DNA of 64,000 nt, from contig NIVC01001150.1 in assembly GCA_002269645.1 (NCBI GenBank), forward strand, positions 62,001 to 126,000. Reading direction: 5' to 3'. The notes below the pieces were generated by a model. The model searched no databases. It was not told where the DNA came from and saw only the letters and a program-made list of their open reading frames with translations. Source of the DNA: Macrostomum lignano (lineage: Eukaryota). The position numbers and the translations under genes are program-made. Below, piece after piece: positions 1-40,874 of the stretch (position 1 is its first letter; each line of letters begins with the position of its first letter).

Positions 1-2148
1 CAACAACCAAATCTGCGGCAGCGATTGTGAAGGAAGAATGGAACCACTTCCGGACTTCTTCATCCGTTCGTGGTCTGAAGAGAACAATGACGTCACCAAC
101 ATGGAGTTTGAAAATTTTCTGGATCCTGTTTCTGCTTGCATTTTTTGCAGTTACGATCGCCCAAATGTACAATGTGCTGTCAGTGTATTTGAAGCAAAAA
201 GACGCCACGATCATGCAGATTCGAAAAGAAGAGAACTCGCCGCAGAAATTTCCTGCCATTTCCTTCTGCAGGCAGCAGCCGTTCGTCAAGGGCAGCATCG
301 TGATGGAGAAACTCAGACAGCACAATGCTACCTTTCTCTCCCAAGAGGAGTACAGTCTGTTCCTCAATAAGGAAACTCAGGACTTGCTGTCATTGAACCT
401 GAGTGATGTACAGCTGAGCGACACATCGCAGAGCATTTTGATTTTCTACGATACACTACAAGAGTTCTATGCTCAAATTCCAACTGCAGCAGTGCCAGAA
501 GTCGCCATGCAATTCGATCATTTGGTCCTGTATCTCAAGATCACTGATCAAGACGGAAAAACCGCCGTACATCACGTTTCATTTCAAGTTTTAACGGAGT
601 TCACAAATCGGACAATACTGAAGGGGTTTACAAGTCGATTTTTACGGAAATCGGCCTTTTATCATCCAAAATATTTGCTGTGTCATACCCTCCGATTGGA
701 AGTAAGTGACCGCAGGGTAGATTCTCAAATGCACTATCCATAAAAAATCGAATTCAATTTAACACAGCATGAGTGAATAACATTTGTCAATTTATGTGTC
801 CAATGTTTATCTTCAATATTCCTAAAATTGAATTCCAGCTGTCTGAAGTAGACCTGAAGCGCATTGCCTCAGTAGACATGCTACTCTGGAATCCTAAAAA
901 AAATTCAGCACTGAGTCACAGAAATCTGCCTCTCGTGCAGCCGCATTTCAAGGTTTCGTGAATGGCGACTCAATTCTGGTGGCTCTGCACCCACCTGAAG
1001 TGCATGGATATTCTGGCATACAAATTTCTGCCACACATCTGCAGCACGGCAGGATGAATATGTTGCAATTCGATACCATTGTGTCAGACTACGTGAATTG
1101 TGCCGATCGCAAACTGCGGCATGGCAGTTTTGGTGAATTCAGCTACACAAGTGGCCACTGCAAGTTAGTGTTTTGTTCAAGTAATTATATCAGATAGCAA
1201 ATTATTTTGGTGTAAGTTGTGTTTATTGAAATGCTGTGGATGTGAAGTTGCTTTTATTCATAAGCATCCAGCAATATCTGTACAAGATAGTATGTGAACT
1301 TTTATAGCATTTGGCAAAAAACAAAATAGTCTCGCATTTACATGATAGATGTAGTGATCACTGACGTCATGTGTTTAAGTCAATTGGTATACTGCAAATG
1401 CAAAAGCGACAAGTCGATCCGCAGTCAGCAATGAGACAGCAGGTTATAATTATGCCCTTTTCATCCCCTGAGTACCACAAGACTATAGTTATCTGATACA
1501 TATTGTAACTGGTGACAACTTTAAAATTGCAGCTTTCTTGAACTTGATGCCCAGCTCAGGCGAGAGTGCAACTGCACTTATGACCCGATGGCTTTCCCGA
1601 TGCCCAGATGCGGCCAGTTGCACAAAGGACAGTCACTGATGAGCAGCATCTTTGATTTATTCAGTTGCGTTAATAAAATCAGCACAGAAAATTCCGTCTG
1701 CAGTTTGCCGCCTTGCTCGCAAACTGAGTACGCCGTGTCGCCTCTGTTTTACGACTGGGGCATCAATGACTTCCAGTGGAAATGGTTCTGGGAATTCGCG
1801 ACGAACTGGGAGAAAGGTTTGGTCGAGTACTGGCAGTACAGAGGCCTCAACGCCTCGCAGAGAACTCAAGCACTTCGGCAGCCTCTCGTTAACTTCTCGG
1901 AAGTCAGCCGTCATTTGTCATCGGTGAGAATCGTGCGCAGATCGCTTCAGACTACTTTCGAGACTGAGGTAGCGCTGACCAGCGCAGCGAATCTGCTGAG
2001 CAGCCTCGGAGGCGCGCTGTCAATGTACATGGGCGTCACGGTGACTTTGGTGGCGGAGTTCGCGGAGTTCTTAGTTCTGGTGTTCAGGGCTCTGAGGAGC
2101 AGACGCAGAGCCGTCATTGAGGTTCAGGAAGCTGCTAATAAACATTGA
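1..2148 (+). CDS. DEG/ENaC (amiloride-sensitive sodium channel/ASIC family) subunit, 5'-truncated by the window, with an apparent frameshift in exon 2
   Basis: Frame is open from the window start (TTKSAAAIVKEEW...). Pre-M1 TSSSVRGL, TM1 KIFWILFLLAFFAVTIAQMY, post-M1 FPAISFC, thumb Cys pattern HCN-FLELDAQLRRECNCTYDPMAFPMPRC, TM2 LLSSLGGALSMYMGVTVTLVAEFAEF. Inferred exons <1..701, 839..1163, 1533..2148 (GTAAGT donor 702, TTCCAG acceptor 838; donor 1164, TGCAG acceptor 1532). Exon 2 needs a +1 shift at the A8 run 896-903. Confidence 0.85.
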
Positions 2149-3635: not shown

Positions 3636-6053
<2,418 letters not shown>

Positions 6054-7040
6054 GATGAATTTTTCAGTACTTAAATGTGATTTGACAGAACTTTAGAATC
6101 ACAGCAATATCTTGAGACGGTTGTTGAGGCGAATGATTAAAAGTCTGTGGTATATATGCAAAAATTGAACCGAGATTCTGACAGCAAGAACAAAGTAGAT
6201 CTATACCAATAAAAACTTTTTACATTTAATTTTTTTAATTAGAAAACTTTTTAAATTATTATAACTTATTTTAATGTTCATTCTGAGTCTACTGTAAATC
6301 TTGAATAAACGTTTTTGTTAAAATCTACGGCAGAAAAAAAATTGGTATTTTAAATTTATGAAGCGTTTTTCCACCGAGTCAGGCTCTTTCTATAACTATG
6401 ACGGCAAAAAATTCATTGTTCTTTTTTAAACAAGTAATACTAGCTCAAGGAAAGCATTATAGTCTAGATCCAACCAGCTAATTCATAACCCCAAATCCAA
6501 TGAAATGCTGCCTTAATTTTACTTTATTATTTTAATTGAATTATATAGTTCATATATATGTATTGGATTAGTCCATACTCTATACACAGTCTATAATATA
6601 CAATGTTATTATTATTATATTTTTAAACAGTGGCAGCACAGCACCTCCAATTAGGGGGCGGGGGGCAGGGGTTGGGTGGTCAACCCCCCTGCCCCCTACC
6701 CCTACAAGAAAAAAAATTTTCTTGTGGCCTTGCGCATACTTTCAGATTTTTTTGTTAAAGGGGTGGTCACCCAGGAGCTACAGCCGCTCTCCCTGCCCCT
6801 TTGTAACATGTCTAACTTAGCTTGTCTATCTTTATCAAGGTGTCATTAATTAGTAATGACTATTATGATAAGGCTTGAGTAGCCTTTGTAAAGTTTATAA
6901 TTAAATTTGACCAAGCTATATTATAGATGACAAGGCTACTTATTAATTAATATTATTAATATCAATTTTCTTGCATAGAAGTTTTTGTTTCAAACATAAC
7001 CAATGTAGTATATAAGTATAACATTTTTATATTCATTATT

Positions 7041-7825
7041 GGCTCATTCCATATAAGATGGACATATTTGGAAAATAGAAAAAAGTCAATATTTTTGCTT
7101 GCCATTGCCTAATTAGCCTATTTTTTACCAAATGTTTATATTGTGCAATATATACAATCTAAGAATAAAGGAATGGTAAAATGTTGGATTAGTATGTTAT
7201 CAATTGGCAAAAAGTCATTTTTGTAAAAATTTGGACATTTTTCGAAGCAAAAGACATCATTAAGATTTTGTACCTTTTAAAAACAAATAGAAAGCTTTTG
7301 AAGGTTGAAACAAACTATAGATAAAAGTATAGTACTTGCATCATCAGATAAAAGCATTGGTGACCAAATAATCTATTATATTTTTAATGTATTAGTACCT
7401 CAAAGTTACTGAATTGACAGAAAAAAATATGTTACGACAATAATGTTACGACCATAAGGCTGCCTTTTCTTTTGTATCTTTGTTGCCTTTTGAGTTTATA
7501 TATTCTAATAAAAGAGTATGATTTCTAAAGATGTTCTTAGTCAAATTTTAAAAATGTATTGCAAAATATCAAAAATGAAAAATGTTATAAGACTTTTACC
7601 TTTTAGTTTCTATATGTCAAAAATCCTGTCGTTACGACCATAAGTGTCATTTAAGGTTTAATAGCATCTACACTAATGATGATATCTATATGAAACTCTA
7701 TAAATATATTCTAGACAAAATAATCTTTCATTTAAAATATTGGTTTAGTATATTCTATTATTAGATTTCATTTTATAAATAAAAATAACCTGTCATGTTA
7801 CGACCATGCTTATATGGAATGAGCC
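7041..7825. mobile_element. Non-autonomous DNA transposon (MITE-like) with perfect 17-bp terminal inverted repeats
   Basis: GGCTCATTCCATATAAG (7041-7057) is the exact reverse complement of CTTATATGGAATGAGCC (7809-7825). Flanks TATTCATTATT / TATTCATTTTT match 10 of 11. AT-rich non-coding interior with recurring GTTACGAC(C/A)A. Confidence 0.75.
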
Positions 7826-10159: not shown

Positions 10160-12333
10160 ATGGTTCGCAGAGGCGGTCGAGACCCCTCTGAACAGCTGCC
10201 GCAGGCGCTGATGATCCGCATTCTGTCCGAGCTGGACCAGCCCAGTCGCATGCAGTGCGCCCTTGTGAGCCGCGCCTGGCACGAGCTGGTCATGCAGCCG
10301 CTGGTGTGGCGCCGACTGCACCTCTACTACGACTGTCTCGGTAAGCCCGGCGTGGCATCACGGCTGTCTCGCTGGCTGTCTCCGACTTTGGTTCAGGTGG
10401 TGTCAGATGGCTCCATCGATCTGAACATTGTTCTGGCCGACTGTCCCAGGCTGCAGCTGCTGACGCTGCGCTCTGAGCACTGCGAATACTACGCTGAGGG
10501 CAACCCGCTGATTGCAGCCGTCAAAGGCTGTCCGCGTCTACGCTGCCTCCGCGTGCTCGACTGCGACAGCTTGCTGACACCGGACACGCTGTCCGGCCTG
10601 CTGACCGGTTGCCCGCGCCTTGACCACCTAGAGCTCGACGATGAGCGCAAGCTGTTCCTGAGCTCGACGGTGTTCTCCGACGCAGCTGCCTGCGCGCAGC
10701 CGTTCTGCAAGCTGCTGGCCCGTCTGACTTCGCTGAGACTCCCGAATTTCTTAGAAAGCTCGCGGCCCGTGGCTGCCGCCGTGTCGGAGAACTGGCCTAA
10801 CTGCACCAACCTGGTGTGTCTGGACGTGGCCTCCGCTACGGAATCCGGTGAGTCTTGCTGCGATTGCGCCTACATTGGGCTTTTTGCACTGCTAGCACAG
10901 GCAGGCAGCGAGCTTCAACTTCGGATTCTCATATTCGCCCGCAGACCTGCTGGCTGCAATCAGCGGCCTGCCGAGCCTACAGGAGCTGTCTGAGAGGCTG
11001 CTTGCCATTACTGATCAGCTGGCTGCCAGCGGAATTCCAGCTGCTGTTCGCCGTAGCAGCTGCCGCCTACGCAGCCTGCAGCTGGAGCAGTGCAGCCCCC
11101 TATCAGCCAGGGGCCTCCGAGCTCTGCTCACCGCCTGGCCGGGACTGCTGAGCCTCCGACTGAGAAACTGCCAGCAACTGGGCGCCGAGGGCTACTTGCT
11201 GGCTAGCGGGGTGGCCACCCTGACTGAACTGGAGCTAACTGGCCCCGCCTGGCCGGGTCTCAGGGACGCCGACTTGGCCAGCCAGCCCCTGCCGTCAGGT
11301 CTGAAGAAGCTGCTGTTGAGCTCCAACGGCTGGCCGTTCGGTGTCACCGGCCTGGGACTGCGGGCTGGCTTGGTCACCTGCCGGGGTGAGCAGCGGGCTG
11401 GAGTGGCTGCGCAGCCTACAGAACAGCAGGCTGTAGGGTTAGGGGAGATACAGAATAACAGCAGGCTGTAGGGGTAGGGGAGCTACAGAAGAACTGCAGG
11501 CTGTAGGGGTAGGGGAGCTACAGAAGAACTGCAGGCTGTAGGGGTAGGGGAGCTAGAGAAGAACTGCAGGCTGTAGGGGTAGGGGAGCTACAGAAGAACT
11601 GCAGGCTGTAGGGGTAGGGGAGCTACAGAATAACAGCAGGCTGTAGGGGTAGGGGAGCTACAGAAGAACAGCAGGCTGTAGGGGTAGGGGAGCTACAGTA
11701 GAAGAGCAGACTGTAGGGGTGAGGTAGCTGAATACATCAAGCTTCAAACTGTTATTAATGACCTTAAAGACAGCGGACTGACGAACGCGTTGAGTAAAAT
11801 GGCTGAATAACTTTCTGTTTGCGGAGCTCCAATGCACAGATCAGTAATAAAACTTATTCCACTTTGATGCCCCAGGCCTGACCCACCTGACCGTCGATCT
11901 GCCCTGCCATGACGAGCTGCTGCCGGCTCTGCTCACCCAGCTGCCCCGCCTGCGCTGCCTTCGCCTGGCCGACTGCAGCGGTTTGACCTCCCGGGCCTGG
12001 CAGGGCCTGTCAAATCTGCGGATCCCGGCGGACTCGTGGCCGGATCTGCACGAGCTGCATCTGCGCCAGTGCCGCAGCCTCACTGATGAGGCTCTGGTCA
12101 ACTTGTGCGACACTCCGGCTGTCAGGGGCCTGCGCCACCTCGAGCTGCACTCCAGCCGCCTGCTGGGCCCGGTGGCACTGCCCATGATCGCTGAGGCCTG
12201 TCCCTGGCTGGCTGTGCTGGAGCTGAAGAACTGCCGGATGCACGCGGCCTGGCTCGCAGTCATGTTCACCCGCGACCCGGAAATGTTCGGCTTCCACCGG
12301 ACCCAGATCCGCCTGTCTGCCGGGGACTACTAA
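10160..12333 (+). CDS. F-box/leucine-rich-repeat protein (FBXL-like), 3 exons, about 540 aa
   Basis: N-terminal F-box LPQALMIRILSELDQPSRMQCALVSRAWHELV followed by cysteine-containing-type LRRs (CPRLQLLTL, CPRLRCLRV, CPRLDHLEL, LPRLRCLRL, WPDLHELHL). Exons 10160..10847, 10909..11385, 11876..12333 (1623 nt, all phase 1). The exon 2 acceptor is chosen by frame. Confidence 0.85.
11421..11722. repeat. 35-bp G-tract minisatellite in F-box intron 2
   Basis: GCAGGCTGTAGGGGTAGGGGAGCTACAGAAGAACT, about 8 copies. Confidence 0.95.
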
Positions 12334-12824: not shown

Positions 12825-13861
12825 TCCATTTTGATGCTGGTTAAAATTTCGCATTTTACCCACTGTAATTTTACTCAAACATATTTTCTGCTGCCTGTGC
12901 CTGTTAAATCTGCGCCTGTCTGTTTGGCAGCGCAGACTCAAGTTGCATTTGCCTGGCGCTGTAGCTACTTGTAGTTGCCAATTATTTACACTTTTCACCT
13001 TTTTCACTATTTAGTATTTTCCCGCTGTTTTTTCTTCCAATTTTGTCTCTGCAGTGAGAGAATCGCCGCTACATAGAAAGTCGATGCAGGGTGTGCTTTG
13101 TTTGAAGCAGATCAATTTGCTTCGTTGCTACGAGCTCGTAAGGAAAATAAAAGAATTCTCCCAAATTGCGGTCGTTTTGCGATATTGATGTGCAGCCCGT
13201 ATTTTTACGCTGCCCAGGACCCGCTGTGTTGCATCATTTTGCCTTATTTAATATAGCAAAGCATTGCATTGCATTGAGAAGCTTTCCTCTTGCATTTGGT
13301 CTTCCATCTGGCGACAATATTACCTTTGCTTAAATTTAAACTGATGATCAGCATGCCACGAAGGGGGGCAAGGGAGGGTAGGGGAGACTCGCAAAAGTAC
13401 ATGACTCCCGTTACAGTGTAGCTTTCGGACCCAGTGAAGTACAGTGGCACTCGCCTTTAAAGTTGCGGTCCGTCCCACCAAGCTCTCCCTTTTTCTGCTG
13501 CTTGAGGAATTGTACTCGGGCTCGTGTTTAGTCCTTTTGGAACTTCAAGCCATCATCTGGAAACTCGCTTATTTGCACTCAGTAGATAGCAAGCTTAAAG
13601 GAGCAGCCTGCTAATCACGAATTCTCGGAAATATAGCTGTGCACCCGATTTTCTAAACAAGGATTGCTTTTAAAGCTTGGTTTTCTCAGGCTAACAAAAT
13701 TCTATATGCGAGGGTACTGTGAGAAACCTAGAAGCGTGCCTTGTTTACGGTTTAACAGTAGGAATACAAGCCATTTGCGCCAATCAGCCAACAGTCTGCC
13801 ACGTCGTCTGCATCAGCTCTGATGAAGCTTCTGGATCTGTGAAAAGTGGCTGCTTCTCTCA

Positions 13862-15474
13862 TGCAGGCAAGATCTTTTTTAGCTATTGAGGAGGCTTTAG
13901 CTCCCCTGCAGGCAGGATCTTTATTAGCTATTGAGGAGGCTTTAGCTCTCCTGCAGGCAGGATCTTTATTAGCTATTGAGGAGGCTTTAGCTCCCCTGCA
14001 GGCAGGATCTTTATTAGCTATTGAGGAGGCTTTAGCTCTCCTGCAGGCAGGATCTTTATTAGCTATTGAGGAGGCTTTAGCTCTCCTGCAGGCAAGATCT
14101 TTATTAGCTATTGAGGAGGCTTTAGCTCTCCTGCAGGCAGGATCTTTATTAGCTATTGAGGAGGCTTTAGCTCCCCTGCAGGCAAGATCTTTATTAGCTA
14201 TTGAGGAGGCTTTAGCTCTCCTGCAGACAAGATCTTTATTAGCTATTGAGGAGGCTTTAGCTCTCCTGCAGACAAGATCTTTATTAGCTATTGAGGAGGC
14301 TTTAGCTCCCCTGCAGGCAGGATCTTTATTAGCTATTGAGGAGGCTTTAGCTCCCCTGCAGGCAAGATCTTTATTAGCTATTGAGGAGGCTTTAGCTCTC
14401 CTGCAGACAAGATCTTTATTAGCTATTGAGGAGGCTTTAGCTCTCCTGCAGGCAAGATCTTTATTAGCTATTGAGGAGGCTTTAGCTCTCCTGCAGGCAA
14501 GATCTTTATTAGCTATTGAGGAGGCTTTAGCTCTCCTGCAGGCAGGATCTTTATTAGCTATTGAGGAGGCTTTAGCTCTCCTGCAGGCAAGATCTTTATT
14601 AGCTATTGAGGAGGCTTTAGCTCTCCTGCAGGCAAGATCTTTATTAGCTATTGAGGAGGCTTTAGCTCTCCTGCAGGCAAGATCTTTATTAGCTATTGAG
14701 GAGGCTTTAGCTCTCCTGCAGGCAAGATCTTTATTAGCTATTGAGGAGGCTTTAGCTCTCCTGCAGGCAAGATCTTTATTAGCTATTGAGGAGGCTTTAG
14801 CTCTCCTGCAGGCAAGATCTTTATTAGCTATTGAGGAGGCTTTAGCTCTCCTGCAGGCAAGATCTTTATTAGCTATTGAGGAGGCTTTAGCTCTCCTGCA
14901 GACAAGATCTTTATTAGCTATTGAGGAGGCTTTAGCTCTCCTGCAGGCAGGATCTTTATTAGCTATTGAGGAGGCTTTAGCTCTCCTGCAGGCAGGATCT
15001 TTATTAGCTATTGAGGAGGCTTTAGCTCTCCTGCAGGCAAGATCTTTATTAGCTATTGAGGAGGCTTTAGCTCTCCTGCAGGCAAGATCTTTATTAGCTA
15101 TTGAGGAGGCTTTAGCTCTCCTGCAGGCAAGATCTTTATTAGCTATTGAGGAGGCTTTAGCTCTCCTGCAGGCAAGATCTTTATTAGCTATTGAGGAGGC
15201 TTTAGCTCTCCTGCAGACAAGATCTTTATTAGCTATTGAGGAGGCTTTAGCTCTCCTGCAGGCAGGATCTTTATTAGCTATTGAGGAGGCTTTAGCTCTC
15301 CTGCAGGCAAGATCTTTATTAGCTATTGAGGAGGCTTTAGCTCTCCTGCAGACAAGATCTTTATTAGCTATTGAGGAGGCTTTAGCTCTCCTGCAGGCAA
15401 GATCTTTATTAGCTATTGAGGAGGCTTTAGCTCTCCTGCAGGCAAGATCTTTATTAGCTATTGAGGAGGCTTTA
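13862..15474. repeat. 45-bp minisatellite (about 36 copies), stop-free in one frame on each strand
   Basis: GCAGGCAAGATCTTTATTAGCTATTGAGGAGGCTTTAGCTCTCCT, three variable positions. Confidence 0.97.
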
Positions 15475-16332
15475 GAACCAGGGGCGCCAGCGCCGGGAAG
15501 AAACAGTGATCCCAATTTCCAATAAAAAATATCTGCTCTGGTGAAATAAATTGAATATTGAAACCTATTGAGCTGATGAAGCACTGATGCAACACACTAG
15601 TTTTCACTGGCTTAGAAGGTTGCTTTCATATAAGGTCAGTCCAGAGGCTATTAAGAGGCCCATGATTTGGGCTTGGTGGAGTTGCAGGTGGCGCTAGGTG
15701 ACTATGGGCACCCTGTTGTCCCCCCCCCGTAGTTGTACGAGTACTGTTAGAGTTTTCTGTGTAAGCCGAGGTAGATCCCTTGGCTGATCAATGAAATACT
15801 TGACTCTACCTATAAAAATCATCTTCAACTCGCATCGAGCGATTAAAGATTAATTCGTAAAGCTGTTAAAATTTTTGCAAAATTTGTTTGGGCTCAGCTC
15901 TCGAATAAAGTGATAAATTTTATTTGTCTAAATATTGAGAGCAAATTGTTCCAACCAGCTTTTTTCCTATTCAGATTTCGCCCAGGACCGGCATTGAATC
16001 AGCAGATGAGGCCAAAGTAGGCGGAGAGGCAACAAAACCAATTCTGCTGCGGAATGGCTTCAGGCCAATCCAATTAGTTTTAAAAGAGCAATTTCCTGTT
16101 GAAAAAACATTTCGTTGTTTATCCGGTCGCAAAAGCAGTTTGTCATTTTTAGCCTAAATGGACAGCAAAACGCTTAGACAATTCGTTTTCAAACGTGTCT
16201 AGCAAAGCTGCTCCATTCCTATCGTTTCGGCGTTCGGGTTCGCCGCGCTATCAATTAAAGCAGGCGGCTCTGCGGCACCGGAAGCCTGGTCGGGCTGACA
16301 GCTTTACAGCCGGGAAACAGCAGAGCATTGCC

Positions 16333-16338
16333 TATAAA
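16333..16338 (+). promoter_or_regulatory. TATA box of the secreted Cys-rich gene
   Basis: CCTATAAATG about 95 bp upstream of ATG 16431. Confidence 0.55.
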
Positions 16339-16430
16339 TGCGCAGTTTTACAGCAACTGCAAAGCCGTATCGGTTTGCCGAGCTCGAACTTAGCATAGTT
16401 ATCAAAATTTAGTTGTGACCCAGCAACCAA

Positions 16431-16907
16431 ATGGCGTCCTCCGTGATTCTCCTGATCGGCGCGGCCTTGGTTCTGACCGTGTCAGGCCTGCGCTGCCCGC
16501 AGCTGGACCCGGAGTCTGTGTGCTCCGCGGCCAGAGAGGGCTTCGAGTACAACGACGGCTGCAACGGGGTGGAGTGCACAGGCAGCGGGCAGTACACCAC
16601 TACCATGCGCTGGTGCCCGCGGCCGCAGTCTGCCGAGGAGCGCCGTGAGTGCCGCGGCAGGGCGTCCGCCATCTTCGAGCGGCTGGGCCCGTTCTCCTGC
16701 AGCAACCTGGAGGCCGCCAGCGTCTGCAGTCGTCGCGGCAGCGGCTTCAGTTACTTCGATGGCTGCAACCGGGTCACTTGCGAGGCCGGCGGCGGCTACA
16801 CCAGCTCGTTCCGGATGTGCCCGCAGGCCGATGCCGAGGGCGCCTACTGCCAGTTCATGGAGTCCCGCCTGGGCGAGGCTGCTCGGCGGAGGAGGCGTCG
16901 CCGCTAG
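16431..16907 (+). CDS. Secreted Cys-rich protein with two tandem pacifastin-like domains and a C-terminal Arg7 tail, 158 aa
   Basis: Signal peptide MASSVILLIGAALVLTVSG. Internal repeat C-x8-C-x12-CN-x3-C-x12-C-x9/11-C occurs twice (DGCNGVEC / DGCNRVTC). GC3-rich codon usage, upstream TATA, downstream AATAAA near 16974. Confidence 0.85.
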   Translation: MASSVILLIGAALVLTVSGLRCPQLDPESVCSAAREGFEYNDGCNGVECTGSGQYTTTMRWCPRPQSAEERRECRGRASAIFERLGPFSCSNLEAASVCSRRGSGFSYFDGCNRVTCEAGGGYTSSFRMCPQADAEGAYCQFMESRLGEAARRRRRRR

Positions 16908-17479
16908 GCTGAAGCCGAGCTGGAGCTGATGGGCCGTTGTTACCGAGGGTTGAGGCTCGATTCATTTAATATTAATAAACTGAGCTTGAGATTAAGGCTC
17001 TAAATAACCGAGTTCTGCTTGACTACATAGATGGTTGAGCAGTTTTTCCGCTTTTTATTTTACTCGAAACACTGATTGACAATTAAAAAAATGAGGAAAT
17101 CACAGGTATTTCAAAAATAATTTTAAGAACATGACGGCGTCCCAGTAGTGAATGAAAAATCCTAACAATGAGATTTAAATATTAGCGGAAATGTTTATTC
17201 TACTGCTGAAAGTAGAATACAAGCGCAGCAAGTATTGCCTCAACGCTTTTGACCGTTTAGCTCTACTAATTTAGTCGGCCTGTGATTACGGCAGCAGCCA
17301 CGTTTACATGTATGGACGAACGGGACGTTGATGTTGTTAAGACGGCAAATAAACAGGAGAGTCGCTCTCGGGTTCCGTCCTTGGCAATAAGGATAGCAGA
17401 AGCACTGTTGTGCTGATTGGGGATATTAGAGACGGAAAGAAGAAAAAGCATGGAGGAGGCAGAAAGACAGACGGACGGA

Positions 17480-27361: not shown

Positions 27362-30300
27362 GCTGACCAGCCCTGAGGAATTATCGTATGGCTGACCAAC
27401 CCTGAGGATTATCGTATGGCTGACCAACCCTGAGGGATTATCGTATGGCTGACCAACCCTGAGGGATTATCGTATGGCTGACCAACCCTGAGGGATTATC
27501 GTATGGCTGACCAACCCTGAGGGATTATCGTATGGCTGACCAACCCTGAGGGATTATCGTATGGCTGACCAACCCTGAGGGATTATCGTATGGCTGACCA
27601 ACCCTGAGGGATTATCGTATGGCTGACCAACCCTGAGGGATTATCGTATGGCTGACCAACCCTGAGGGATTATCGTATGGCTGACCAACCCTGAGGGATT
27701 ATCGTATGGCTGACCAACCCTGAGGGATTATCGTATGGCTGACCAACCCTGAGGGATTATCGTATGGCTGACCAACCCTGAGGGATTATCGTATGGCTGA
27801 CCAACCCTGAGGGATTATCGTATGGCTGACCAACCCTGAGGGATTATCGTATGGCTGACCAACCCTGAGGGATTATCGTATGGCTGACCAACCCTGAGGG
27901 ATTATCGTATGGCTGACCAACCCTGAGGGATTATCGTATGGCTGACCAACCCTGGGGATTATCGTATGGCTGACCAACCCTGAGGGATTATCGTATGGCT
28001 GACCAACCCTGGGGATTATCGTATGGCTGACCAACCCTGAGGGATTATCGTATGGCTGACCAACCCTGAGGGATTATCGTATGGCTGACCAACCCTGAGG
28101 GATTATCGTATGGCTGACCAACCCTGAGGGATTATCGTATGGCTGACCAACCCTGAGGGATTATCGTATGGCTGACCAACCCTGAGGGATTATCGTATGG
28201 CTGACCAACCCTGAGGGATTATCGTATGGCTGACCAACCCTGAGGGATTATCGTATGGCTGACCAACCCTGAGGGATTATCGTATGTCTGACCAACCCTG
28301 AGGATTATCGTATGGCTGACCAACCCTGAGGGATTATCGTATGGCTGACCAACCCTGAGGGATTATCGTATGGCTGACCAACCCTGAGGGATTATCGTAT
28401 GGCTGACCAACCCTGAGGGATTATCGTATGGCTGACCAACCCTGAGGGATTATCGTATGGCTGACCAACCCTGAGGGATTATCGTATGGCTGACCAACCC
28501 TGAGGGATTATCGTATGGCTGACCAACCCTGAGGGATTATCGTATGGCTGACCAACCCTGAGGGATTATCGTATGACTGACCAACCCTGAGGGATTATCG
28601 TATGGCTGACCAACCCTGAGGGATTATCGTATGGCTGACCAACCCTGAGGGATTATCGTGTGGCTGACCAACCCTGAGGGATTATCGTATGGCTGACCAA
28701 CCCTGAGGGATTATCGTATGGCTGACCAACCCTGAGGGATTATCGTATGGCTGACCAACCCTGAGGGATTATCGTATGGCTGACCAACCCTGAGGGATTA
28801 TCGTATGGCTGACCAACCCTGAGGGATTATCGTATGGCTGACCAACCCTGAGGGATTATCGTATGGCTGACCAACCCTGAGGGATTATCGTATGGCTGAC
28901 CAACCCTGAGGGATTATCGTATGGCTGACCAACCCTGAGGGATTATCGTATGGCTGACCAACCCTGAGGGATTATCGTATGGCTGACCAACCCTGAGGGA
29001 TTATCGTATGGCTGACCAACCCTGAGGGATTATCGTATGACTGACCAACCCTGAGGGATTATCGTATGGCTGACCAACCCTGAGGGATTATCGTATGGCT
29101 GACCAACCCTGAGGGATTATCGTGTGGCTGACCAACCCTGAGGGATTATCGTATGGCTGACCAACCCTGAGGGATTATCGTATGGCTGACCAACCCTGAG
29201 GGATTATCGTATGGCTGACCAACCCTGAGGGATTATCGTATGGCTGACCAACCCTGAGGGATTATCGTATGGCTGACCAACCCTGAGGGATTATCGTATG
29301 GCTGACCAACCCTGAGGGATTATCGTATGGCTGACCAACCCTGAGGGATTATCGTATGGCTGACCAACCCTGAGGGATTATCGTATGGCTGACCAACCCT
29401 GAGGGATTATCGTATGGCTGACCAACCCTGGGGATTATCGTATGGCTGACCAACCCTGAGGGATTATCGTATGGCTGACCAACCCTGGGGATTATCGTAT
29501 GGCTGACCAACCCTGAGGGATTATCGTATGGCTGACCAACCCTGAGGGATTATCGTATGGCTGACCAACCCTGAGGGATTATCGTATGGCTGACCAACCC
29601 TGAGGGATTATCGTATGGCTGACCAACCCTGAGGGATTATCGTATGGCTGACCAACCCTGAGGGATTATCGTATGGCTGACCAACCCTGAGGGATTATCG
29701 TATGTCTGACCAACCCTGAGGGATTATCGTATGGCTGACCAACCCTGAGGGATTATCGTATGGCTGACCAACCCTGAGGGATTATCGTATGACTGACCAA
29801 CCCTGAGGGATTATCGTATGGCTGACCAACCCTGAGGGATTATCGTATGGCTGACCAACCCTGAGGGATTATCGTATGGCTGACCAACCCTGAGGGATTA
29901 TCGTATGGCTGACCAACCCTGAGGGATTATCGTATGGCTGACCAACCCTGAGGGATTATCGTATGGCTGACCAACCCTGAGGGATTATCGTATGACTGAC
30001 CAACCCTGAGGGATTATCGTATGGCTGACCAACCCTGAGGGATTATCGTATGGCTGACCAACCCTGAGGGATTATCGTGTGGCTGACCAACCCTGAGGGA
30101 TTATCGTATGGCTGACCAACCCTGAGGGATTATCGTATGGCTGACCAACCCTGAGGGATTATCGTATGGCTGACCAACCCTGAGGGATTATCGTATGGCT
30201 GACCAACCCTGAGGGATTATCGTACGGCTGACCAACACTGGGGGAATATCGTGTGGCTGACCAACCCTGAGGGATTATCGTATGGCTGACCAACCCTGAG

Positions 30301-30609
30301 GGATTATCGTATGGCTGACCAACCCTGAGGGATTATCGTATGGCTGACCAACCCTGAGGGATTATCGTATGGCTGACCAACCCTGAGGGATTATCGTATG
30401 GCTGACCAACCCTGAGGAATTATCGTATGGCTGACCAACCCTGAGGGATTATCGTATGGCTGACCAACCCTGAGGGATTATCGTATGGCTGACCAACCCT
30501 GAGGGATTATCGTATGGCTGACCAACCCTGAGGGATTATCGTATGGCTGACCAACCCTGAGGGATTATCGTATGGCTGACCAACCCTGAGGATTATCGTA
30601 TGGCTGACC
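27362..30609. repeat. 29-bp minisatellite, about 110 highly homogeneous copies
   Basis: GCTGACCAACCCTGAGGGATTATCGTATG head-to-tail with no spacers. Confidence 0.99.
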
Positions 30610-35785: not shown

Positions 35786-36805
35786 ACTCGTCTCCCTTTC
35801 TCTGACCCGCTGTCCCTCTCTATTTTAAACGCTCTCTCCATCCCACAGTCTCAGCTCTACTCTTCCCCTTTCCCTGCGCGCACACCTTAAGCATCAACTG
35901 AGCCCCAGTAACCGGGCGATAGCAGAGCAGCTGAGCAGCTCCAGAATCCGTGACTGACAGGCCATCGCACGGCACACTTCGCATCTCCCGTGGGCCAGTC
36001 GAGTGTCCTAAAATTGCATGTTTCCCAATTCACAAGCAGGCAATGCTGGCCAAATACTTGTTGAGCCCGAGCTTGGGAAATAGATGGATATTCGATTCGA
36101 ATTAGATCGAATTGCCACTCGAACAACAATGCAGGCCATCTCGGCCCGGAGACAGGGGGGCTCCATCCGGCTGCTCAGCGGTGACGCCACGCCGAGTTTT
36201 TGTCGCGAGCCGCACGGAGGCCGGCGGGGGGTCGCGGCCATAGACAGCAGCTTTGAGAAGGCAATTACGAGTCAGGAGGAGGGCGGAAGCCGGCCATCCC
36301 CGGACTCTCGTCATCGGTGACAGCTCGGATGACACTGCGGGAGACTTGCGTCACCGCCCGCAGTTTTCAATAATATAAATATTCGCTACTCGAGCCTGCG
36401 CCATAAACTCGTTGCCGAGGCCTGCAGTTTGCCTGCAAGTTTTGTTTAGCTAAACTGGCCAGTCAGCTGACCCCAGCTGTGCTTAATCCCCAGGCCCGTC
36501 ACGCTGGGCATCAGTGGGATATCAATGAGCTGGAGGGGCGGGCCCGTGGCGTAATCCGGCCAGGTGCGACTGCATCCGGGTCAGCGCCGCCCGTGCGGGG
36601 ATCGAAGAAGGAGCGCTGAAGTGGCCGAAGCGTTCGGAGCGGTGCGAACTCCCTAAGCATTTCGAGCTCGCCTTAACTTTACAGATGCGGCTGTTGGGCC
36701 TTCGTGCGGCAGCTGCTGGGGCGGTCGCGAGACTTCTGCGCTCTTGGAAGGCCCGCCGGCTTTTGGTGGCTTTTTTCAAGGCAAATGACTCTGTTGCTAG
36801 GACTC

Positions 36806-38628
36806 TTGTCATGACAGCATCCAGCTTTATGACTCGTGTCATGACAGCACACACCTCTATGACTCGTGTCATGACAGCATCCAGCTCTATTTATGACTCG
36901 TGTCATGACAGCATCCAGCTCTATGACTCGTCATGACAGCATCCAGCTCTATGACTCGTGTCATGACAGCATCCAGCTCTATGACTCGTGTCATGACAGC
37001 ATCCAGCTCTATGACTCGTGCCATGACAGCATCCAGCTCTATGACTCGTGTCATGACAGCACACACCTCTATGACTCGTGTCATGACAGCACACACCTAT
37101 GACTCGTGTCATGACAGCACCACCTCTATGACTCGTGTCATGACAGCATCCAGCTCTATTTATGACTCGTGTCATGACAGCATCCAGCTCTATGACTCTT
37201 CATGACAGCATCCAGCTCTATGACTCGTGTCATGACAGCATCCAGCTCTATGACTCGTGTCATGACAGCATCCAGCTCTATGACTCGTGCCATGACAGCA
37301 TCCAGCTCTATGACTCGTGTCATGACAGCACACACCTCTATGACTCGTGTCATGACAGCATCCAGCTCTATGACTCGTGCCATGACAGCATCCAGCTCTA
37401 TGACTCGTGTCATGACAGCACACACCTCTATGACTCGTGTCATGACAGCACACACCTCTATGACTCGTGTCATGACAGCATCCAGCTCTATTTATGACTC
37501 GTGTCATGACAGCATCCAGCTCTATGACTCTTCATGACAGCATCCAGCTCTATGACTCGTGTCATGACAGCATCCAGCTCTATGACTCGTGTCATGACAG
37601 CATCCAGCTCTATGACTCGTGCCATGACAGCATCCAGCTCTATGACTCGTGTCATGACAGCACACACCTCTATGACTCGTGTCATGACAGCACACACTCT
37701 ATGACTCGTGTCATGACAGCACCAGCTCTATGACTCGTGTCATGACAGCACCAGCTCTATGACTCGTGTCATGACAGCATCACAGCTCTATGACTCGTGT
37801 CATGACAGCATCCAGCTCTATGACTCTTCATGACAGCATCCAGCTCTATGACTCGTGTCATGACAGCATCCAGCTCTATGACTCGTGTCATGACAGCATC
37901 CAGCTCTATGACTCGTGCCATGACAGCATCCAGCTCTATGACTCGTGTCATGACAGCACACACCTCTATGACTCGTGTCATGACAGCATCCAGCTCTATG
38001 ACTCGTGCCATGACAGCATCCAGCTCTATGACTCGTGTCATGACAGCACACACCTCTATGACTCGTGTCATGACAGCACACACCTCTACGACTCGTGTCA
38101 TGACAGCATCCAGCTCTATTTATGACTCGTGTCATGACAGCATCCAGCTCTATGACTCTTCATGACAGCATCCAGCTCTATGACTCGTGTCATGACAGCA
38201 TCCAGCTCTATGACTCGTGTCATGACAGCATCCAGCTCTATGACTCGTGCCATGACAGCATCCAGCTCTATGACTCGTGTCATGACAGCACACACCTCTA
38301 TGACTCGTGTCATGACAGCACACACCTCTATGACTCGTGTCATGACAGCATCCAGCTTTATGACTCGTGTCATGACAGCACACAGCCTTATAACTCGTGT
38401 CATGACAGCATCCAGCTCTATGACTCGTCATGACAGCATCCAGCTTATGACTCGTCATGACAGCATCCAGCTCTATGACGTTCATGACAGCACACACCTC
38501 TATGACTCGTGTCATGACAGCATCCAGCTTTATGACTCGTGTCATGACAGCATCCAGCTCTATGACTCGTCATGACAGCATCCAGCTTTATGACTCGTCA
38601 TGACAGCATCCAGCTTTATGACTCGTGT
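36806..38628. repeat. 30-bp minisatellite with higher-order structure
   Basis: CATGACAGCATCCAGCTCTATGACTCGTGT, about 60 copies. Explains the many MTRV/HDS/CCHD ORFs. Confidence 0.98.
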
Positions 38629-40874
38629 CGTAGTACAGTTCTTAGTTAGCCAGGCGCAGAAACTGAATGGTATTGAAGTTTTCACAGACAATTTTATCTG
38701 TGGAAATTAAGAAAGCAAATCTTTCCAAAATACTAAAGCATAAAATTCTTTTATTCAGAGGCTCCTTTCCCAAGTGTGAAATCCCAATGGCTTCTTTGCC
38801 CCCCCCCGTGGCTCCAGACTTCCTCCAAAAACAAGCCTCAATGGCATGAAGAGGCTCGGCTGTTCCCTCTGAATTTTTTACCCAAAGCTTGGCCACCGCA
38901 ATGGCGAGGGCGTCAAAAAGTCAGCAAACCGCAGGGTGACGCAACCGATGGGGCCATAAACAGAGGCTGGAGTCTCCCAACGGGGGGCCGGCACCCCAAA
39001 TCCTGTAGGCTGCGGAGCAACTGCCGCCAATCCTCAAAGCCGATTGCCTGCCTGTCAGGTCCAGCGCACAGGCAGCGGCAGGGTTAATTCTCGCACTGCC
39101 AGCCGGTGATGCAACCTGCGCATTCGGCTTCACAATTTATTGCCACTTTTTGCTGCTTTCGCGCTGCAATTCGCGCACTTGCACGGCAAAGTTGACACTC
39201 CAGCTTATCTGCGGCTGTTTGACTTTGCCGGCCGGGGCCGAGGATGAAGGAGGCTGGGAGATACCGCCGCGAGTGACGCAATGCCGCACTGTTTAGCCGG
39301 GAATTGGGTGTCGCACTCCGAACTGACGCAGCGATCTGCAGAGGGAGTTTCGAGCCCGCACCTGCGGCCTGAAGCCCCGGCACTGAGAATCGGGCTGAAA
39401 GCAATTACAGAGATAATAAATCTGGCAGGCAATTCTTCACAGGCCGCAGGGTCAATTAACACTGGAAAATCAGCCTGTGATGCTGAACACCATGAGCCAC
39501 TCGTCATTTCTGCGTAGATAATCAAATCTTCTCTTGAAAGCGTTGCAGTTTCTTTTACCAACCAGCTTTTCCTTAATTTCAACCATGAGTCCTCAATCTC
39601 AACCAGCGGTTTTCCGGTGCCTTGCTGGGGAGCCAAAGTGTGGGTCATGAGTCCGCATTGGTCATCATCTGCCTGAAGGACCTTCGGGCCATAAAAATGC
39701 CCCGACAAGTTTCAGAATGACAAATTCCACCGTGAAAACAACCCAGAGATGAGGGCGCACGGAGACGGCACCAAACCTGCCAGAGATTTCTGTTTCGGGC
39801 AGCGGGGCGACTCGCGCGTGGAAACTCGAGAGCGACTGAAAGCAGAACTGAAAGTAACAAAAAGCAGTCGGTGAAACAAGAAAAACCATGGCATTCGCTG
39901 CATTTTTGCCAGTTGGGTGTCAGTTTCTGTGCTTTATGGCCCCGAACTCCCATTGGCAACTGGGGATCGCTACAATTATGGGCTTTGGAAACTGAAATCA
40001 GAGCAAACCTGCGGGCCCTGCAGTGCGGAGCGCGGGCTGACAATTAAACATTTTGCGAGCCACATTGACAACCGGGGAGCCGGGCAGAGCAGGGCTTGTT
40101 GCTTGACTGTTCAGTTTCGGCCTTCATAAATATTTTATTGCTCGCTGAGATTTTACAGGACATGCGCTGAGCTTCCGCGTTCTTTAACCCCGACTGTCTC
40201 AGCGTGGGAAATGTCTATGGCACAAAGGGGAAAGTTTTATCGGAGCGATGGATGAGACACTTTTGGTTCGCTGTTTATGGCCCGCAGACTGCAGTTTACG
40301 GTGCGAAATTTTCCAGCAATATCGCTTCACTCGGGTTTTACATCTCAGTGCTGCTTGGAGAATAAACTCGGGAAGGCACTCGATGTTGTTGGCCATGGTG
40401 ACTACATAGTGAGAATATCATTTGGCCGCAAAGCAGTGCCATCTAAGAGCTAAGCACAATAAGCATCCAAATCTAGAAAGCACTTTCTGAGTCTTCCAGA
40501 GCCAAAAATCTCGGCTTTGATTTCTGCCGCAAGCAACAGGCAGCCGGCCAGGCAGTTGCCCCCTCCCCGTGCCACCAACAGACCCCTGCCTGCACCAGCG
40601 AATCCCGGATGCAGAGGCGGCACGGGCGGTGCGCTACAGAGGAAACTGAGGCAGTTTCTCACGGCCGCGGCAGCCGAGAACTGGGTCAGCTGGGTCAGCT
40701 GGGTCAGCGGGGCACGGGAAACCCCTGCCGGGGCTGCCAGCGCCATTTCCTACCGAAACGGAAACTCATCGCGTCATAAAATTTATTTGCTGGCTGAGCC
40801 TCAGCTGCCGCTGCCAAGCATCGCATGACACCTGTGGGGGGCTGCTGGCATGCAGTGCTTCATGTCTGGGGATG

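What the first reader, a model, noticed from the sequence alone, without database searches (positions are those of the whole stretch)
16431..16907. Pacifastin-like inhibitor in which the C3-C5 disulfide pair is lost in both domains and a new outer Cys pair appears
Established: the pacifastin motif is C-x9-12-CN-x-C-x-C-x2-3-G-x3-6-CT-x3-C, with disulfides 1-4, 2-6 and 3-5 and P1 between C5 and C6. Seen: domain 1 C31-x12-C44-N-G-V-E-C49..G..T57-T-M-R-W-C62; domain 2 C99-x12-C112-N-R-V-T-C117..G..S125-S-F-R-M-C130. C3 (to V) and C5 (to T/S) are co-lost in both domains, and extra Cys flank each (C22/C74, C90/C140). Inference: a re-wired pacifastin-type fold with P1 Met59 and Phe127 (chymotrypsin/elastase-type targets) and an Arg7 tail that may tether it to mucus, matrix or microbes. 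Possibly an undescribed inhibitor or defence family.
Basis: partly seen in the sequence, partly recalled or inferred. Interest (0 to 1): 0.7.

Follow-up and report, generated by a model that had tools for sequence, protein, structure and literature searches.

The report
Flatworm pacifastin-type inhibitor with rewired disulfides
This is a real, intact gene of the flatworm Macrostomum lignano for a small secreted protein made of two pacifastin-type protease-inhibitor domains that have lost one of the three classic disulfide bonds and instead carry an extra outer one, a natural variant of a known inhibitor fold that has not been described.

Summary
Window 16431-16907 (+) is an intact single-exon ORF of 158 aa: a signal peptide, two 42-44% identical six-Cys domains and a C-terminal Arg7 run. 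It is 98% identical to a Macrostomum lignano hypothetical protein.

The pacifastin reading is supported:
- The protein's own Pfam match is sub-threshold (PF05375, 19.3 bits against a cut-off of 27.9).
- It is 46% identical to the N-terminal half of four-domain M. lignano paralogs. These pass the Pfam threshold, and their last domain keeps all six pacifastin cysteines plus the outer pair.
- Across 39 non-redundant family domains, C3 and C5 are always present together (13) or absent together (26).
- A profile built only from C3/C5-less domains hits nothing in the PDB except pacifastins, and matches canonical pacifastin domains by hhalign at 96.8% probability.
- An AlphaFold2 model of domain 1 (pLDDT 95.8) shows a three-stranded sheet flanked by N- and C-terminal helices. 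Its 18 best PDB fold matches are all pacifastins.

- The outer Cys pair is older than the loss, because eight-Cys domains exist.
- The Arg7 tail matches polybasic linker and tail runs in paralogs, so it is more likely a processing site than an anchor.

Protease inhibition (P1 Met59, Phe127) is inferred, not shown. I class it as a new variant of a known kind, of moderate interest.

The parts
16333..16339 (+). TATAAAT box about 98 nt upstream of the ATG (putative core promoter)
   Evidence: Read from the sequence. The same CCTATAAATGCGCA is conserved at the same offset in paralogous locus L004.
16416..16418 (+). In-frame TGA five codons upstream of the start, so ATG 16431 is the first possible start in this exon
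   Evidence: Sequence and ORF listing.
16431..16907 (+). Complete single-exon CDS, 158 aa plus TAG: a secreted two-domain pacifastin-derived protein
   Evidence: It is 98% identical to the M. lignano hypothetical protein BOX15_Mlig004023g2. The exact protein is encoded at two further loci of assembly GCA_002269645.1. Against the third copy pN/pS is 0.24, there are no indels, and all 12 Cys are kept.
16431..16487 (+). Signal peptide, residues 1-19 (MASSVILLIGAALVLTVSG, predicted cleavage after VSG)
   Evidence: Inferred from the n/h/c-region pattern and the -3/-1 rule. It aligns with the hydrophobic N-termini of paralogs P0003 and P0004. No signal-peptide predictor was available.
16494..16652 (+). 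Domain 1, C22 to C74: outer Cys C22/C74; pacifastin C1=C31, C2=C44 (followed by N45), C3 replaced by V47, C4=C49, G53, C5 replaced by T57, P2 T58, P1 M59 (16605-16607), P1' R60, C6=C62
   Evidence: Register from the family alignment A2, HMM alignments to PDB pacifastins and hhalign. The AF2 model of residues 20-77 has pLDDT 95.8: N-terminal helix, three strands, C-terminal helix. The top 18 PDB fold matches are all pacifastins.
16653..16697 (+). Inter-domain linker, residues 75-89 (RGRASAIFERLGPFS), conserved with paralogs (AIF/AVW-x-RLGPF)
   Evidence: Alignment with P0003, P0004 and P0005.
16698..16850 (+). Domain 2, C90 to C140: outer Cys C90/C140; C1=C99, C2=C112 (followed by N113), C3 replaced by V115, C4=C117, G121, C5 replaced by S125, P2 S126, P1 F127 (16809-16811), P1' R128, C6=C130
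   Evidence: The weak Pfam PF05375 match covers residues 105-135. It is an internal repeat of domain 1 and groups with domain 2 of P0003 in the NJ tree.
16884..16904 (+). C-terminal Arg7 run (residues 152-158), a polybasic tail
   Evidence: Equivalent polybasic runs occur after the d2-type domain in P0004 (RRRRR, in the linker) and P0005 (RRRRR near the C-terminus), in the linkers of P0024 and P0026, and at the C-termini of P0003 and P0002. Removing it shifts the calculated pI of the mature protein from 8.5 to 5.05.
16974..16979 (+). AATAAA polyadenylation signal, beginning 67 nt after the stop codon
   Evidence: Sequence. An AATAAA lies at the same distance in paralog locus L004.

Best explanation
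The gene encodes a small secreted protein of Macrostomum lignano, about 14-15 kDa when mature. It consists of two tandem domains descended from the pacifastin serine-protease-inhibitor domain.

Each domain keeps the three-stranded pacifastin core, with disulfides C1-C4 and C2-C6, the C2-Asn, the loop Gly and the P2 Thr/Ser. The third classic disulfide (C3-C5), which normally braces the reactive loop at P3, has been replaced by a hydrophobic residue (Val) and a hydroxyl residue (Thr/Ser).

A feature specific to this flatworm-type family surrounds the core. An N-terminal helix and a C-terminal helix are tied together by an extra outer disulfide (C22-C74 and C90-C140). This outer clamp existed before the loss and probably made C3-C5 dispensable.

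The most likely function is a double-headed, substrate-like (canonical, Laskowski-type) inhibitor of chymotrypsin- or elastase-like S1 proteases. It would present Met59-Arg60 and Phe127-Arg128 as P1-P1'.

The gene corresponds to the front half (domains 1-2) of four-domain paralogs. It ends in the polybasic run that lies between or after domains in other family members (after the d2-type domain in P0004 and P0005), so the Arg7 tail is most likely a convertase/carboxypeptidase processing remnant.

Shown here: gene integrity, homology, the cysteine pattern and the predicted fold. Inferred: disulfide pairing, inhibition, target class and tail processing.
For: Homology:
- A profile of the two window domains recovers 39 proteins at E <= 0.001 from 1.84 billion. 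They grade from multi-domain M. lignano paralogs (E 1e-49 to 1e-18) into canonical pacifastin arrays of insects, nemerteans and molluscs.
- The window protein is 46% identical over 149 residues to the N-terminal half of P0003 (E 5e-45).
- P0002, P0003 and P0004 pass the Pfam PF05375 gathering score (77.5, 49.9 and 65.6 bits against 27.9). UniProt names P0003 and P0004 pacifastin domain-containing proteins.
- In P0002, P0003, P0004 and P0006 the last domain has CNxCxC...CTRxxC plus the outer pair, next to C3/C5-less domains in the same chain.
- Profile A2 against PDB sequences gave 16 hits, all pacifastins, best E 1.1e-5. The variant-only profile A3 gave 11 hits, all pacifastins, best E 0.011.
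- hhalign of A3 against canonical six-Cys domains gave 96.8% probability, E 2.3e-10.

Fold:
- The AF2 domain model has pLDDT 95.8.
- The Foldseek top 18 PDB hits are all pacifastins, with target-normalised TM 0.51-0.73 and rmsd 1.5-2.9 A.

Disulfide logic:
- C3 and C5 covary perfectly, 26/0/0/13.
- A second, independent loss is seen in P0037 relative to its 50%-identical eight-Cys relative P0029.
- Ca, C1, C2, C4, C6 and Cf are invariant in 37 aligned domains.

Inhibitor-like signature:
- P2 Thr (17 of 26) and the Pro after C6 (17 of 26) are conserved.
- P1 and P2' are variable. P1 is L, R, S, F, W or M.

Gene is under constraint:
- pN/pS is 0.24 against a 98.5%-identical paralogous copy, with no indels in the CDS. 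The 6.2-kb aligned region (CDS included) is 94.7% identical with 54 gap openings.

Tail:
- Polybasic runs recur in linkers and tails of the family.
Against: - No biochemical data exist for any member of this family.
- The C3-C5 bridge is regarded as the brace of the reactive loop (PMC13388995). Its loss could turn the domain into a weak or temporary inhibitor, or a non-inhibitor.
- The window protein itself is below the Pfam threshold, and phmmer against the PDB finds nothing.
- Foldseek E-values are weak (0.1-0.9) because the domain is tiny. The AF2 alignment included 13 eight-Cys rows, so the model is not fully independent of pacifastin-like sequences.
- I could not read the model coordinates, so the outer disulfide and the C1-C4/C2-C6 pairing are inferred by homology and by elimination.
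- No transcript or expression evidence for this exact gene was found. Only genomic contigs carry it.
- P1' Arg and the bulky P2' Trp61 are untested in pacifastin-protease interfaces.
Confidence: 0.6

Rival explanations
1. The protein is pacifastin-derived but no longer an inhibitor. After losing the loop-bracing C3-C5 disulfide, the domains serve as a binding or structural module. Examples would be a secreted reproductive or seminal, egg-shell, adhesive, matrix or ligand-binding protein. The helices and the outer disulfide would form a new interaction surface.
For: - C3-C5 is absent in 26 of 39 family domains, and the loss occurred at least twice, so whatever that bridge did is dispensable here.
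- The family has added two helices not found in inhibitory pacifastins.
- The 2026 survey reports that non-arthropod pacifastin-like domains often sit in matrix-type multidomain proteins.
- The next-best structural neighbours are VWC/VWF-type modules, which are binding domains, and canonical hits also touch the VWC/VWF Pfam models.
Against: - The most pacifastin-like stretch of the variant domains is precisely the reactive-loop region T-T-x-x-x-C-P.
- P2 Thr is conserved while P1 varies among typical specificity residues (L, R, F, M, W). This is the pattern of active canonical inhibitors.
- The eight-Cys last domains of paralogs have P1 Arg (CTRxxC), like trypsin-directed pacifastins.
Confidence: 0.28
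2. The Arg7 tail is functional in the mature protein. It would act as a cationic anchor to polyanions (mucus, glycosaminoglycans, microbial surfaces, nucleic acids) or give antimicrobial activity.
For: - The tail turns an acidic protein (pI 5.05) into a basic one (pI 8.5).
- It is kept unchanged in all three genomic copies.
Against: - In paralogs equivalent runs lie inside inter-domain linkers (P0004 RRRRR, P0024 RRKKRKRR, P0026 RRKRK), where they look like RXXR-type convertase sites.
- C-terminal basic residues in the secretory pathway are usually trimmed by carboxypeptidases (established knowledge).
- Many family members have no such tail.
Confidence: 0.25
3. The pacifastin resemblance is convergent or spurious. 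The domain would belong to another small Cys-rich class, such as VWC, chitin-binding type 2 or thyroglobulin type 1, as the automatic UniProt names of two paralogs suggest.
For: - The window protein's own PF05375 hit is below threshold.
- UniProt labels P0006 'chitin-binding type-2' and P0005 'thyroglobulin type-1'.
- Short Cys-rich profiles can give false matches.
Against: - Every PDB sequence hit (16 of 16 and 11 of 11) and the 18 best fold hits are pacifastins.
- hhalign gives 96.8% probability.
- Canonical and variant domains occur in the same polypeptide chains.
- The Pfam scan of P0006 finds only a weak pacifastin hit, with no CBM14 or thyroglobulin match; P0005 was not scanned.
Confidence: 0.03
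4. The ORF is a non-functional duplicate: a truncated relic of a four-domain gene that is not expressed.
For: - It equals only the front half of the four-domain paralogs.
- No transcript contig carrying it was retrieved.
- It lies among minisatellite arrays.
Against: - The frame is intact, with a signal peptide and all 12 Cys.
- The TATA box and AATAAA are conserved in a paralogous copy.
- pN/pS is 0.24 and the CDS has no indels, whereas the 6.2-kb aligned region has 54 gap openings.
- Three copies are retained.
- No remnant of domains 3-4 lies downstream or anywhere else in the window.
Confidence: 0.06

Closest known systems
Pacifastin family of serine-protease inhibitors (Pfam PF05375 Pacifastin_I; locust PMP-C/LCMI-II, SGCI, SGTI; PDB 1GL1, 1KGM, 1KIO, 2F91, 7SND)
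   Same: - Three-stranded beta core.
- C1, C2-Asn, C4 and C6 in register.
- Gly in the C4-C5 loop, Thr/Ser at P2 and Pro after C6.
- P1 at C6-3.
- Tandem-domain secreted precursors with basic inter-domain sites.
- Profile and fold searches return only this family.
   Different: - C3 and C5, and hence the 3-5 disulfide, are absent.
- Each domain is about 53 residues rather than about 35.
- It has an N-terminal helix, a C-terminal helix and an additional outer Cys pair.
- The organism is a flatworm, not an arthropod.
- The window protein is below the Pfam gathering score.
- Inhibition is untested.
Four-domain M. lignano paralogs P0003 (PAA70141.1 / A0A267F8N7) and P0004 (PAA50211.1 / A0A1I8G3C6), 'Pacifastin domain-containing protein'
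   Same: - Same species.
- 46% identity and colinear over the signal peptide, domain 1, linker and domain 2.
- Same C3/C5-less domains with the outer pair.
- Polybasic runs.
   Different: - The paralogs continue with a third variant domain and a fourth eight-Cys domain that keeps the full pacifastin motif (P1 Arg).
- The window gene stops after domain 2 at the polybasic run, so it has no canonical domain at all. This is why it carries no annotation.
Ancestral and conventional pacifastin-like domains across Metazoa, Fungi and Bacteria (Rodriguez-Aguilar et al., Sci Rep 2026, PMC13388995)
   Same: - Pacifastin-like domains occur outside arthropods, including at least one platyhelminth.
- The C2-Asn and the loop Gly are universal motifs.
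- The segment before C2 is rich in Gly and aromatic residues (GF-x-Y-x-DG here).
   Different: - That survey required all six cysteines and discarded anything else, so this variant falls outside its dataset.
- It describes no outer disulfide or flanking helices in the sections read.
- It reports low proteolytic-processing potential in the linkers of non-arthropods, whereas this family has RRRRR-type linkers.
von Willebrand factor type C / VWF-like small Cys-rich modules
   Same: Small disulfide-rich beta modules. They are the next structural neighbours after pacifastins. Canonical pacifastin arrays among the hits also touch the Pfam VWC/VWF models.
   Different: Foldseek probabilities are much lower (<= 0.41), with only partial overlap. 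The window protein and its close paralogs have no Pfam VWC hit. The cysteine pattern is different.

Membership tests
Pacifastin (PF05375 / MEROPS I19) | Six-cysteine signature C1-x9-12-C2-N-x-C3-x-C4-x2-3-G-x3-6-C5-T-x3-C6 | tested here: not met
   C1, C2-N, C4, G and C6 are present with spacing 12 / 4 / 12. C3 is Val (V47, V115) and C5 is Thr or Ser (T57, S125) in both domains.
Pacifastin (PF05375 / MEROPS I19) | Sequence match to the curated family model above its gathering score | tested here: not met
   The window protein scores 19.3 bits, E 9.6e-4, against a cut-off of 27.9. Paralogs P0002, P0003 and P0004 do pass (77.5, 49.9 and 65.6 bits).
Pacifastin (PF05375 / MEROPS I19) | Common descent with bona fide pacifastin domains | tested here: met
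   - Variant and full-motif domains lie in the same chains.
- The variant-only profile hits only pacifastins in the PDB.
- hhalign against canonical domains gives 96.8% probability, E 2.3e-10.
- The profile search grades into insect pacifastin arrays.
Pacifastin (PF05375 / MEROPS I19) | Three-stranded antiparallel beta-sheet fold | tested here: met
   This is a prediction only. The AF2 model has pLDDT 95.8 with strands at domain residues 20-22, 27-32 and 35-38. The Foldseek top 18 hits are all pacifastins, with target-normalised TM 0.51-0.73.
Pacifastin (PF05375 / MEROPS I19) | Disulfide connectivity 1-4, 2-6, 3-5 | tested here: inconclusive
   The 3-5 bond cannot exist. The 1-4 and 2-6 bonds are inferred from homology, and the outer pair by elimination. 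The perfect C3/C5 covariation supports their being partners in the eight-Cys relatives.
Pacifastin (PF05375 / MEROPS I19) | Canonical inhibition of S1 serine proteases through the C5-C6 loop | not testable with these tools
   There is only indirect evidence: conserved P2 Thr and C6-Pro with variable P1.
Macrostomum-type extended pacifastin family (defined here) | Outer Cys pair (Ca 6-10 residues before C1, usually 8; Cf about 7-19 residues after C6) with flanking helices around a pacifastin core | tested here: met
   Ca and Cf are invariant in 37 aligned domains, including both window domains. Helices are predicted at domain residues 8-14 and 49-57.
Chitin-binding type 2 (CBM14) / thyroglobulin type 1 (automatic names of paralogs P0006 and P0005) | Match to the corresponding family models | tested here: not met
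   The Pfam scans of the window protein and of P0006 show no CBM14 or thyroglobulin hit, only a weak pacifastin hit. P0005 itself was not scanned.

The most novel reading that the evidence does not exclude
This would be a flatworm lineage of pacifastin descendants that first added a helix-helix outer disulfide clamp. It then shed the reactive-loop-bracing C3-C5 bond repeatedly (at least twice). The result is a distinct eight-to-six-Cys domain class with altered inhibitory behaviour (temporary or broad-spectrum) or an entirely new non-inhibitory role. Polybasic linkers would cut multi-domain precursors into two-domain units like the one encoded here. That would be a natural example of disulfide rewiring in a canonical inhibitor scaffold, and of precursor processing outside arthropods.
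Probability: 0.3. Interest if true: 0.6.

Novelty: new variant of a known kind. Interest (0 to 1): 0.45.

Why it matters
Pacifastins are a textbook small disulfide-rich canonical inhibitor scaffold, and one that has been used for directed evolution of specific protease inhibitors. The C3-C5 bridge is considered essential for the reactive-loop geometry.

This family offers side-by-side natural versions with and without that bridge, sometimes in the same polypeptide. All of them carry an additional outer clamp. That allows direct tests of which disulfides the fold and the inhibition really need, and it gives a template for engineering.

It also matters for surveys. Searches that demand all six cysteines or the Pfam threshold miss these genes, which is why the window gene is an unannotated hypothetical protein. 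Polybasic linkers in a flatworm family also bear on the recent claim that inter-domain processing is an arthropod innovation.

The biological role in M. lignano is open, and the animal is amenable to in situ hybridisation and RNAi.

Tried and rejected
- Single-sequence AF2 of the whole protein gave pLDDT 51.5 and was unusable.
- phmmer of the protein against PDB sequences gave no hit.
- The word-indexed homologue search found only the 98% copy with the single protein and nothing with the 37-domain alignment. This reflects a limit of the index, because the exhaustive HMM search found 39 relatives.
- tblastn of the window protein against the window found no second copy.
- Literature searches returned nothing for pacifastin plus Macrostomum or for the locus tags Mlig004023, Mlig003398, Mlig001679 and Mlig009177. 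The supplements of the 2026 paper hold no Macrostomum entry as text. A general pacifastin title scan showed no paper on C3/C5-less variants.
- I could not name the organisms behind the ENA, Logan and JGI relatives. One relative, P0024, lies on a 10.8-kb contig next to a gene with a RIC3 domain (PF15361).
- The NJ tree of the 37 domains was used only for nearest-neighbour relations. With about 55 columns it cannot decide how many times C3-C5 was lost.
- The CBM14, thyroglobulin and IBR readings are rejected. There was no Pfam hit for the first two, and only an IBR_1 match at 14.2 bits, far below threshold.
Full report
**1. What is at the coordinates**

Window 16431-16907 (+) is an uninterrupted ATG-to-TAG reading frame of 158 codons.
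- An in-frame TGA sits five codons upstream.
- A TATAAAT box lies at 16333-16339 and an AATAAA at 16974-16979. Both are conserved in a paralogous locus.
- The coding stretch is 70% GC (GC3 89%), inside flanks of about 45-50% GC that are full of minisatellites.

The protein has four parts:
- a typical signal peptide (residues 1-19, inferred);
- two repeats, each bounded by cysteines (C22...C74 and C90...C140);
- a short conserved linker;
- a C-terminal run of seven arginines.

The two repeats are 42-44% identical with all six Cys in register (BLASTP E = 2e-14).

**2. Source and copies**

The protein is 98% identical to the NCBI entry 'hypothetical protein BOX15_Mlig004023g2 [Macrostomum lignano]'. 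The exact sequence is encoded on two further contigs of assembly GCA_002269645.1.

The 98% copy lies in a 6.2-kb region that is 94.7% identical to the window, with 54 gap openings. Its CDS has seven substitutions (three non-synonymous, four synonymous; pN/pS 0.24), no indels, and all Cys preserved.

The gene therefore looks maintained in three copies in the assembly. No transcript contig for this exact protein was retrieved, so expression is not shown.

**3. Relatives**

Pfam gives only a sub-threshold Pacifastin_I match (19.3 bits, cut-off 27.9). The PDB sequence search with the single protein finds nothing.

An exhaustive HMM search with a profile of the two domains against 1.84 billion representative proteins returned 39 hits at E <= 0.001.

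The strongest are multi-domain proteins, most of them from M. lignano:
- P0003, P0004, P0005 and P0006 are M. lignano.
- P0002 is from an unnamed sequencing run.
- P0003 and P0004 are named 'Pacifastin domain-containing protein' by UniProt.
- P0002, P0003 and P0004 pass the Pfam gathering score.

Weaker hits are canonical pacifastin arrays of Diptera (Clunio, Bradysia) and a bug (Cimex). There are also pacifastin-like arrays of nemerteans (Lineus, Tubulanus) and related arrays in molluscs.

The window protein aligns colinearly over signal peptide, domain 1, linker and domain 2 with the N-terminal half of P0003 (46% identity over 149 residues, E 5e-45). In a neighbour-joining tree each window domain groups with the corresponding P0003 domain (the tree is otherwise unresolved).

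**4. The cysteine pattern across the family**

I extracted every domain that has the outer pair and tabulated the residues at the C3 and C5 positions.
- 39 non-redundant domains were found.
- 26 lack both cysteines. C3 is V/I in 18 and F/M/Y in 6. C5 is T/S in 17.
- 13 have both. C5 is at C6-5 in eight of them and shifted by one residue in five.
- There is no mixed case (nominal Fisher p 1.2e-10). The domains are related, so this overstates independence.

The eight-Cys state occurs in three settings:
- as the last domain of the four- and five-domain proteins, next to C3/C5-less domains in the same chain;
- throughout proteins such as P0022, P0024 and P0026;
- in the single-domain proteins P0029 and P0031.

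P0037 is 50% identical to the eight-Cys protein P0029 over its whole length, including the signal peptide. It has C3 replaced by Lys and the C5 segment deleted. This looks like a second, independent loss.

The six cysteines Ca, C1, C2, C4, C6 and Cf are invariant in the 37-row alignment. So the outer pair is a family character that predates the loss of C3-C5.

**5. Tests of the pacifastin relationship that do not depend on C3 and C5**

- A profile of all 37 domains, searched against all PDB sequences at E <= 10, returned 16 sequences. Every one is a pacifastin-family inhibitor (best 1KIO, E 1.1e-5).
- A profile of only the 24 C3/C5-less domains returned 11 sequences, again all pacifastins (best E 0.011).
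- hhalign of that variant-only profile against 31 canonical six-Cys domains gave 96.8% probability, E 2.3e-10, over 29 columns.
- All three alignments place T57/S125 opposite C5, T58/S126 opposite the conserved P2 Thr, M59/F127 opposite P1, and C62/C130 opposite C6.

**6. Fold**

AlphaFold2 on the single sequence was useless (pLDDT 51.5).

With the 37-row domain alignment, domain 1 (residues 20-77) was modelled at mean pLDDT 95.8. The model has:
- a short N-terminal helical segment carrying Ca and C1;
- three beta strands;
- a C-terminal helix carrying Cf.

Foldseek against 350,542 PDB chains ranked 18 pacifastin-family chains first. Their target-normalised TM is 0.51-0.73, rmsd 1.5-2.9 A over 29-34 columns, with probability up to 0.97. 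VWF/mucin/VWC modules follow, with far lower probabilities.

Three caveats apply:
- E-values are weak (0.1-0.9), as expected for about 30 aligned residues.
- The alignment given to AF2 contained eight-Cys rows.
- Coordinates could not be inspected, so disulfide geometry is inferred.

**7. How it most likely works**

By homology, each domain is held by C1-C4 and C2-C6. By elimination, the third bond is the outer Ca-Cf bond clamping the two helices.

The segment X5-T-P1-P1'-x-C6-P is the most pacifastin-like part of the variant domains. P2 Thr (17/26) and the Pro after C6 (17/26) are conserved. P1 varies among Leu, Arg, Ser, Phe, Trp and Met, and P1' is mostly Arg, Met or Lys. That is the pattern expected of an active canonical inhibitor family.

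I therefore favour a double-headed inhibitor of chymotrypsin- or elastase-like S1 proteases, with P1 Met59 and Phe127. I put homology and fold at about 0.95 and inhibitory function at about 0.55-0.6.

The main rival is that loss of the loop brace has converted the domains into non-inhibitory binding modules (about 0.28).

**8. The arginine tail**

Polybasic runs recur in the family:
- inside inter-domain linkers: P0004 RRRRR after domain 2, P0024 RRKKRKRR, P0026 RRKRK;
- at or near C-termini: P0005 RRRRR after a d2-type domain, P0003 HRRRK, P0002 KRRK.

The window gene thus looks like the d1-d2 unit of a four-domain precursor, ending at the linker's basic site. Dibasic inter-domain processing is well known for insect pacifastin precursors (PMC2689174). 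By analogy the tail is probably a convertase/carboxypeptidase substrate.

Trimming it would change the calculated pI from 8.5 to 5.05. A functional cationic anchor cannot be excluded.

**9. Comparison with what is known, and novelty**

Pacifastin-like domains outside arthropods were reported in 2009 for Placozoa and Onychophora (PMC2689174). In 2026 they were reported across Metazoa, Fungi and Bacteria, including at least one platyhelminth (PMC13388995).

That survey required all six cysteines and rejected anything else. It also reported low linker-processing potential outside arthropods.

I found no paper on pacifastin domains lacking C3-C5 or carrying an outer disulfide with flanking helices.

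The window gene is therefore a new variant of a known kind. It is not categorically new, because its paralogs are already labelled as pacifastin-domain proteins. It fails two formal membership criteria (the full six-Cys signature and the Pfam threshold) while meeting the tests of descent and predicted fold.

**10. Verdict**

Function is untested. Interest is moderate (0.45).

Noticed in passing
window 13856-15475; 27362-30609; 36797-38629; 46835-54504; 59021-60482 and about 25 further arrays: The window is densely packed with minisatellite arrays (34 TRF rows at score >= 200). The 45-bp x 36 array just upstream of the gene produces spurious 610-aa and 559-aa ORFs on opposite strands. A 20-bp unit is repeated 385 times over 7.7 kb.
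   Followed up: partly
window 27-743 (+) and 1588-2148 (+): Two ORF pieces match the N- and C-terminal parts of the amiloride-sensitive sodium channel family (PF00858 ASC, E 1e-13 and 2e-9). This is probably a DEG/ENaC channel gene with an intron.
   Followed up: partly
window 3908-4369 (-): This ORF fragment matches SecY / Sec61-alpha (PF00344, E 6e-20, profile positions 153-259). It is an exon or a gene fragment.
   Followed up: no
window 10160-10993 (+): A 277-aa ATG-started ORF with an F-box-like domain (PF12937, E 3e-12) and a weak LRR match.
   Followed up: no
L005 (NIVC01001150.1), L006 (NIVC01002547.1), L004 (NIVC01000140.1): The gene exists in three copies in the M. lignano assembly. 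Two encode the identical protein. The third is 98.5% identical in the CDS and lies in a 6.2-kb region 94.7% identical to the window, with many indels. This fits recent large-scale duplication in this genome.
   Followed up: partly
P0029 versus P0037 (unnamed ENA contigs): These are a pair of 50%-identical single-domain relatives. One has all eight Cys. The other has C3 replaced by Lys and the C5 segment deleted. This is an apparently independent second loss of the C3-C5 pair.
   Followed up: partly
P0004 174-178, P0024 140-147, P0026 103-107 (relatives): Runs of five to eight Arg/Lys sit in inter-domain linkers of a non-arthropod pacifastin-type family. This is at odds with the recent statement that such processing potential is an arthropod feature.
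   Followed up: partly
P0005 (UniRef A0A1I8HYL8) and P0006 (A0A1I8GZT9): The automatic UniProt names 'Thyroglobulin type-1 domain-containing' and 'Chitin-binding type-2 domain-containing' look doubtful. The Pfam scan of P0006 found only a weak pacifastin match, and P0005 was not scanned. P0005 also contains the same ~40-residue segment three times, which suggests a faulty gene model or a recent internal duplication.
   Followed up: no
L007 (ENA ERZ21788738 ctg48897l), gene at 6376-7056: The eight-Cys two-domain relative P0024 is an intronless ORF on a 10.8-kb contig. A neighbouring called gene on the contig has a RIC3 domain. The organism could not be named.
   Followed up: no
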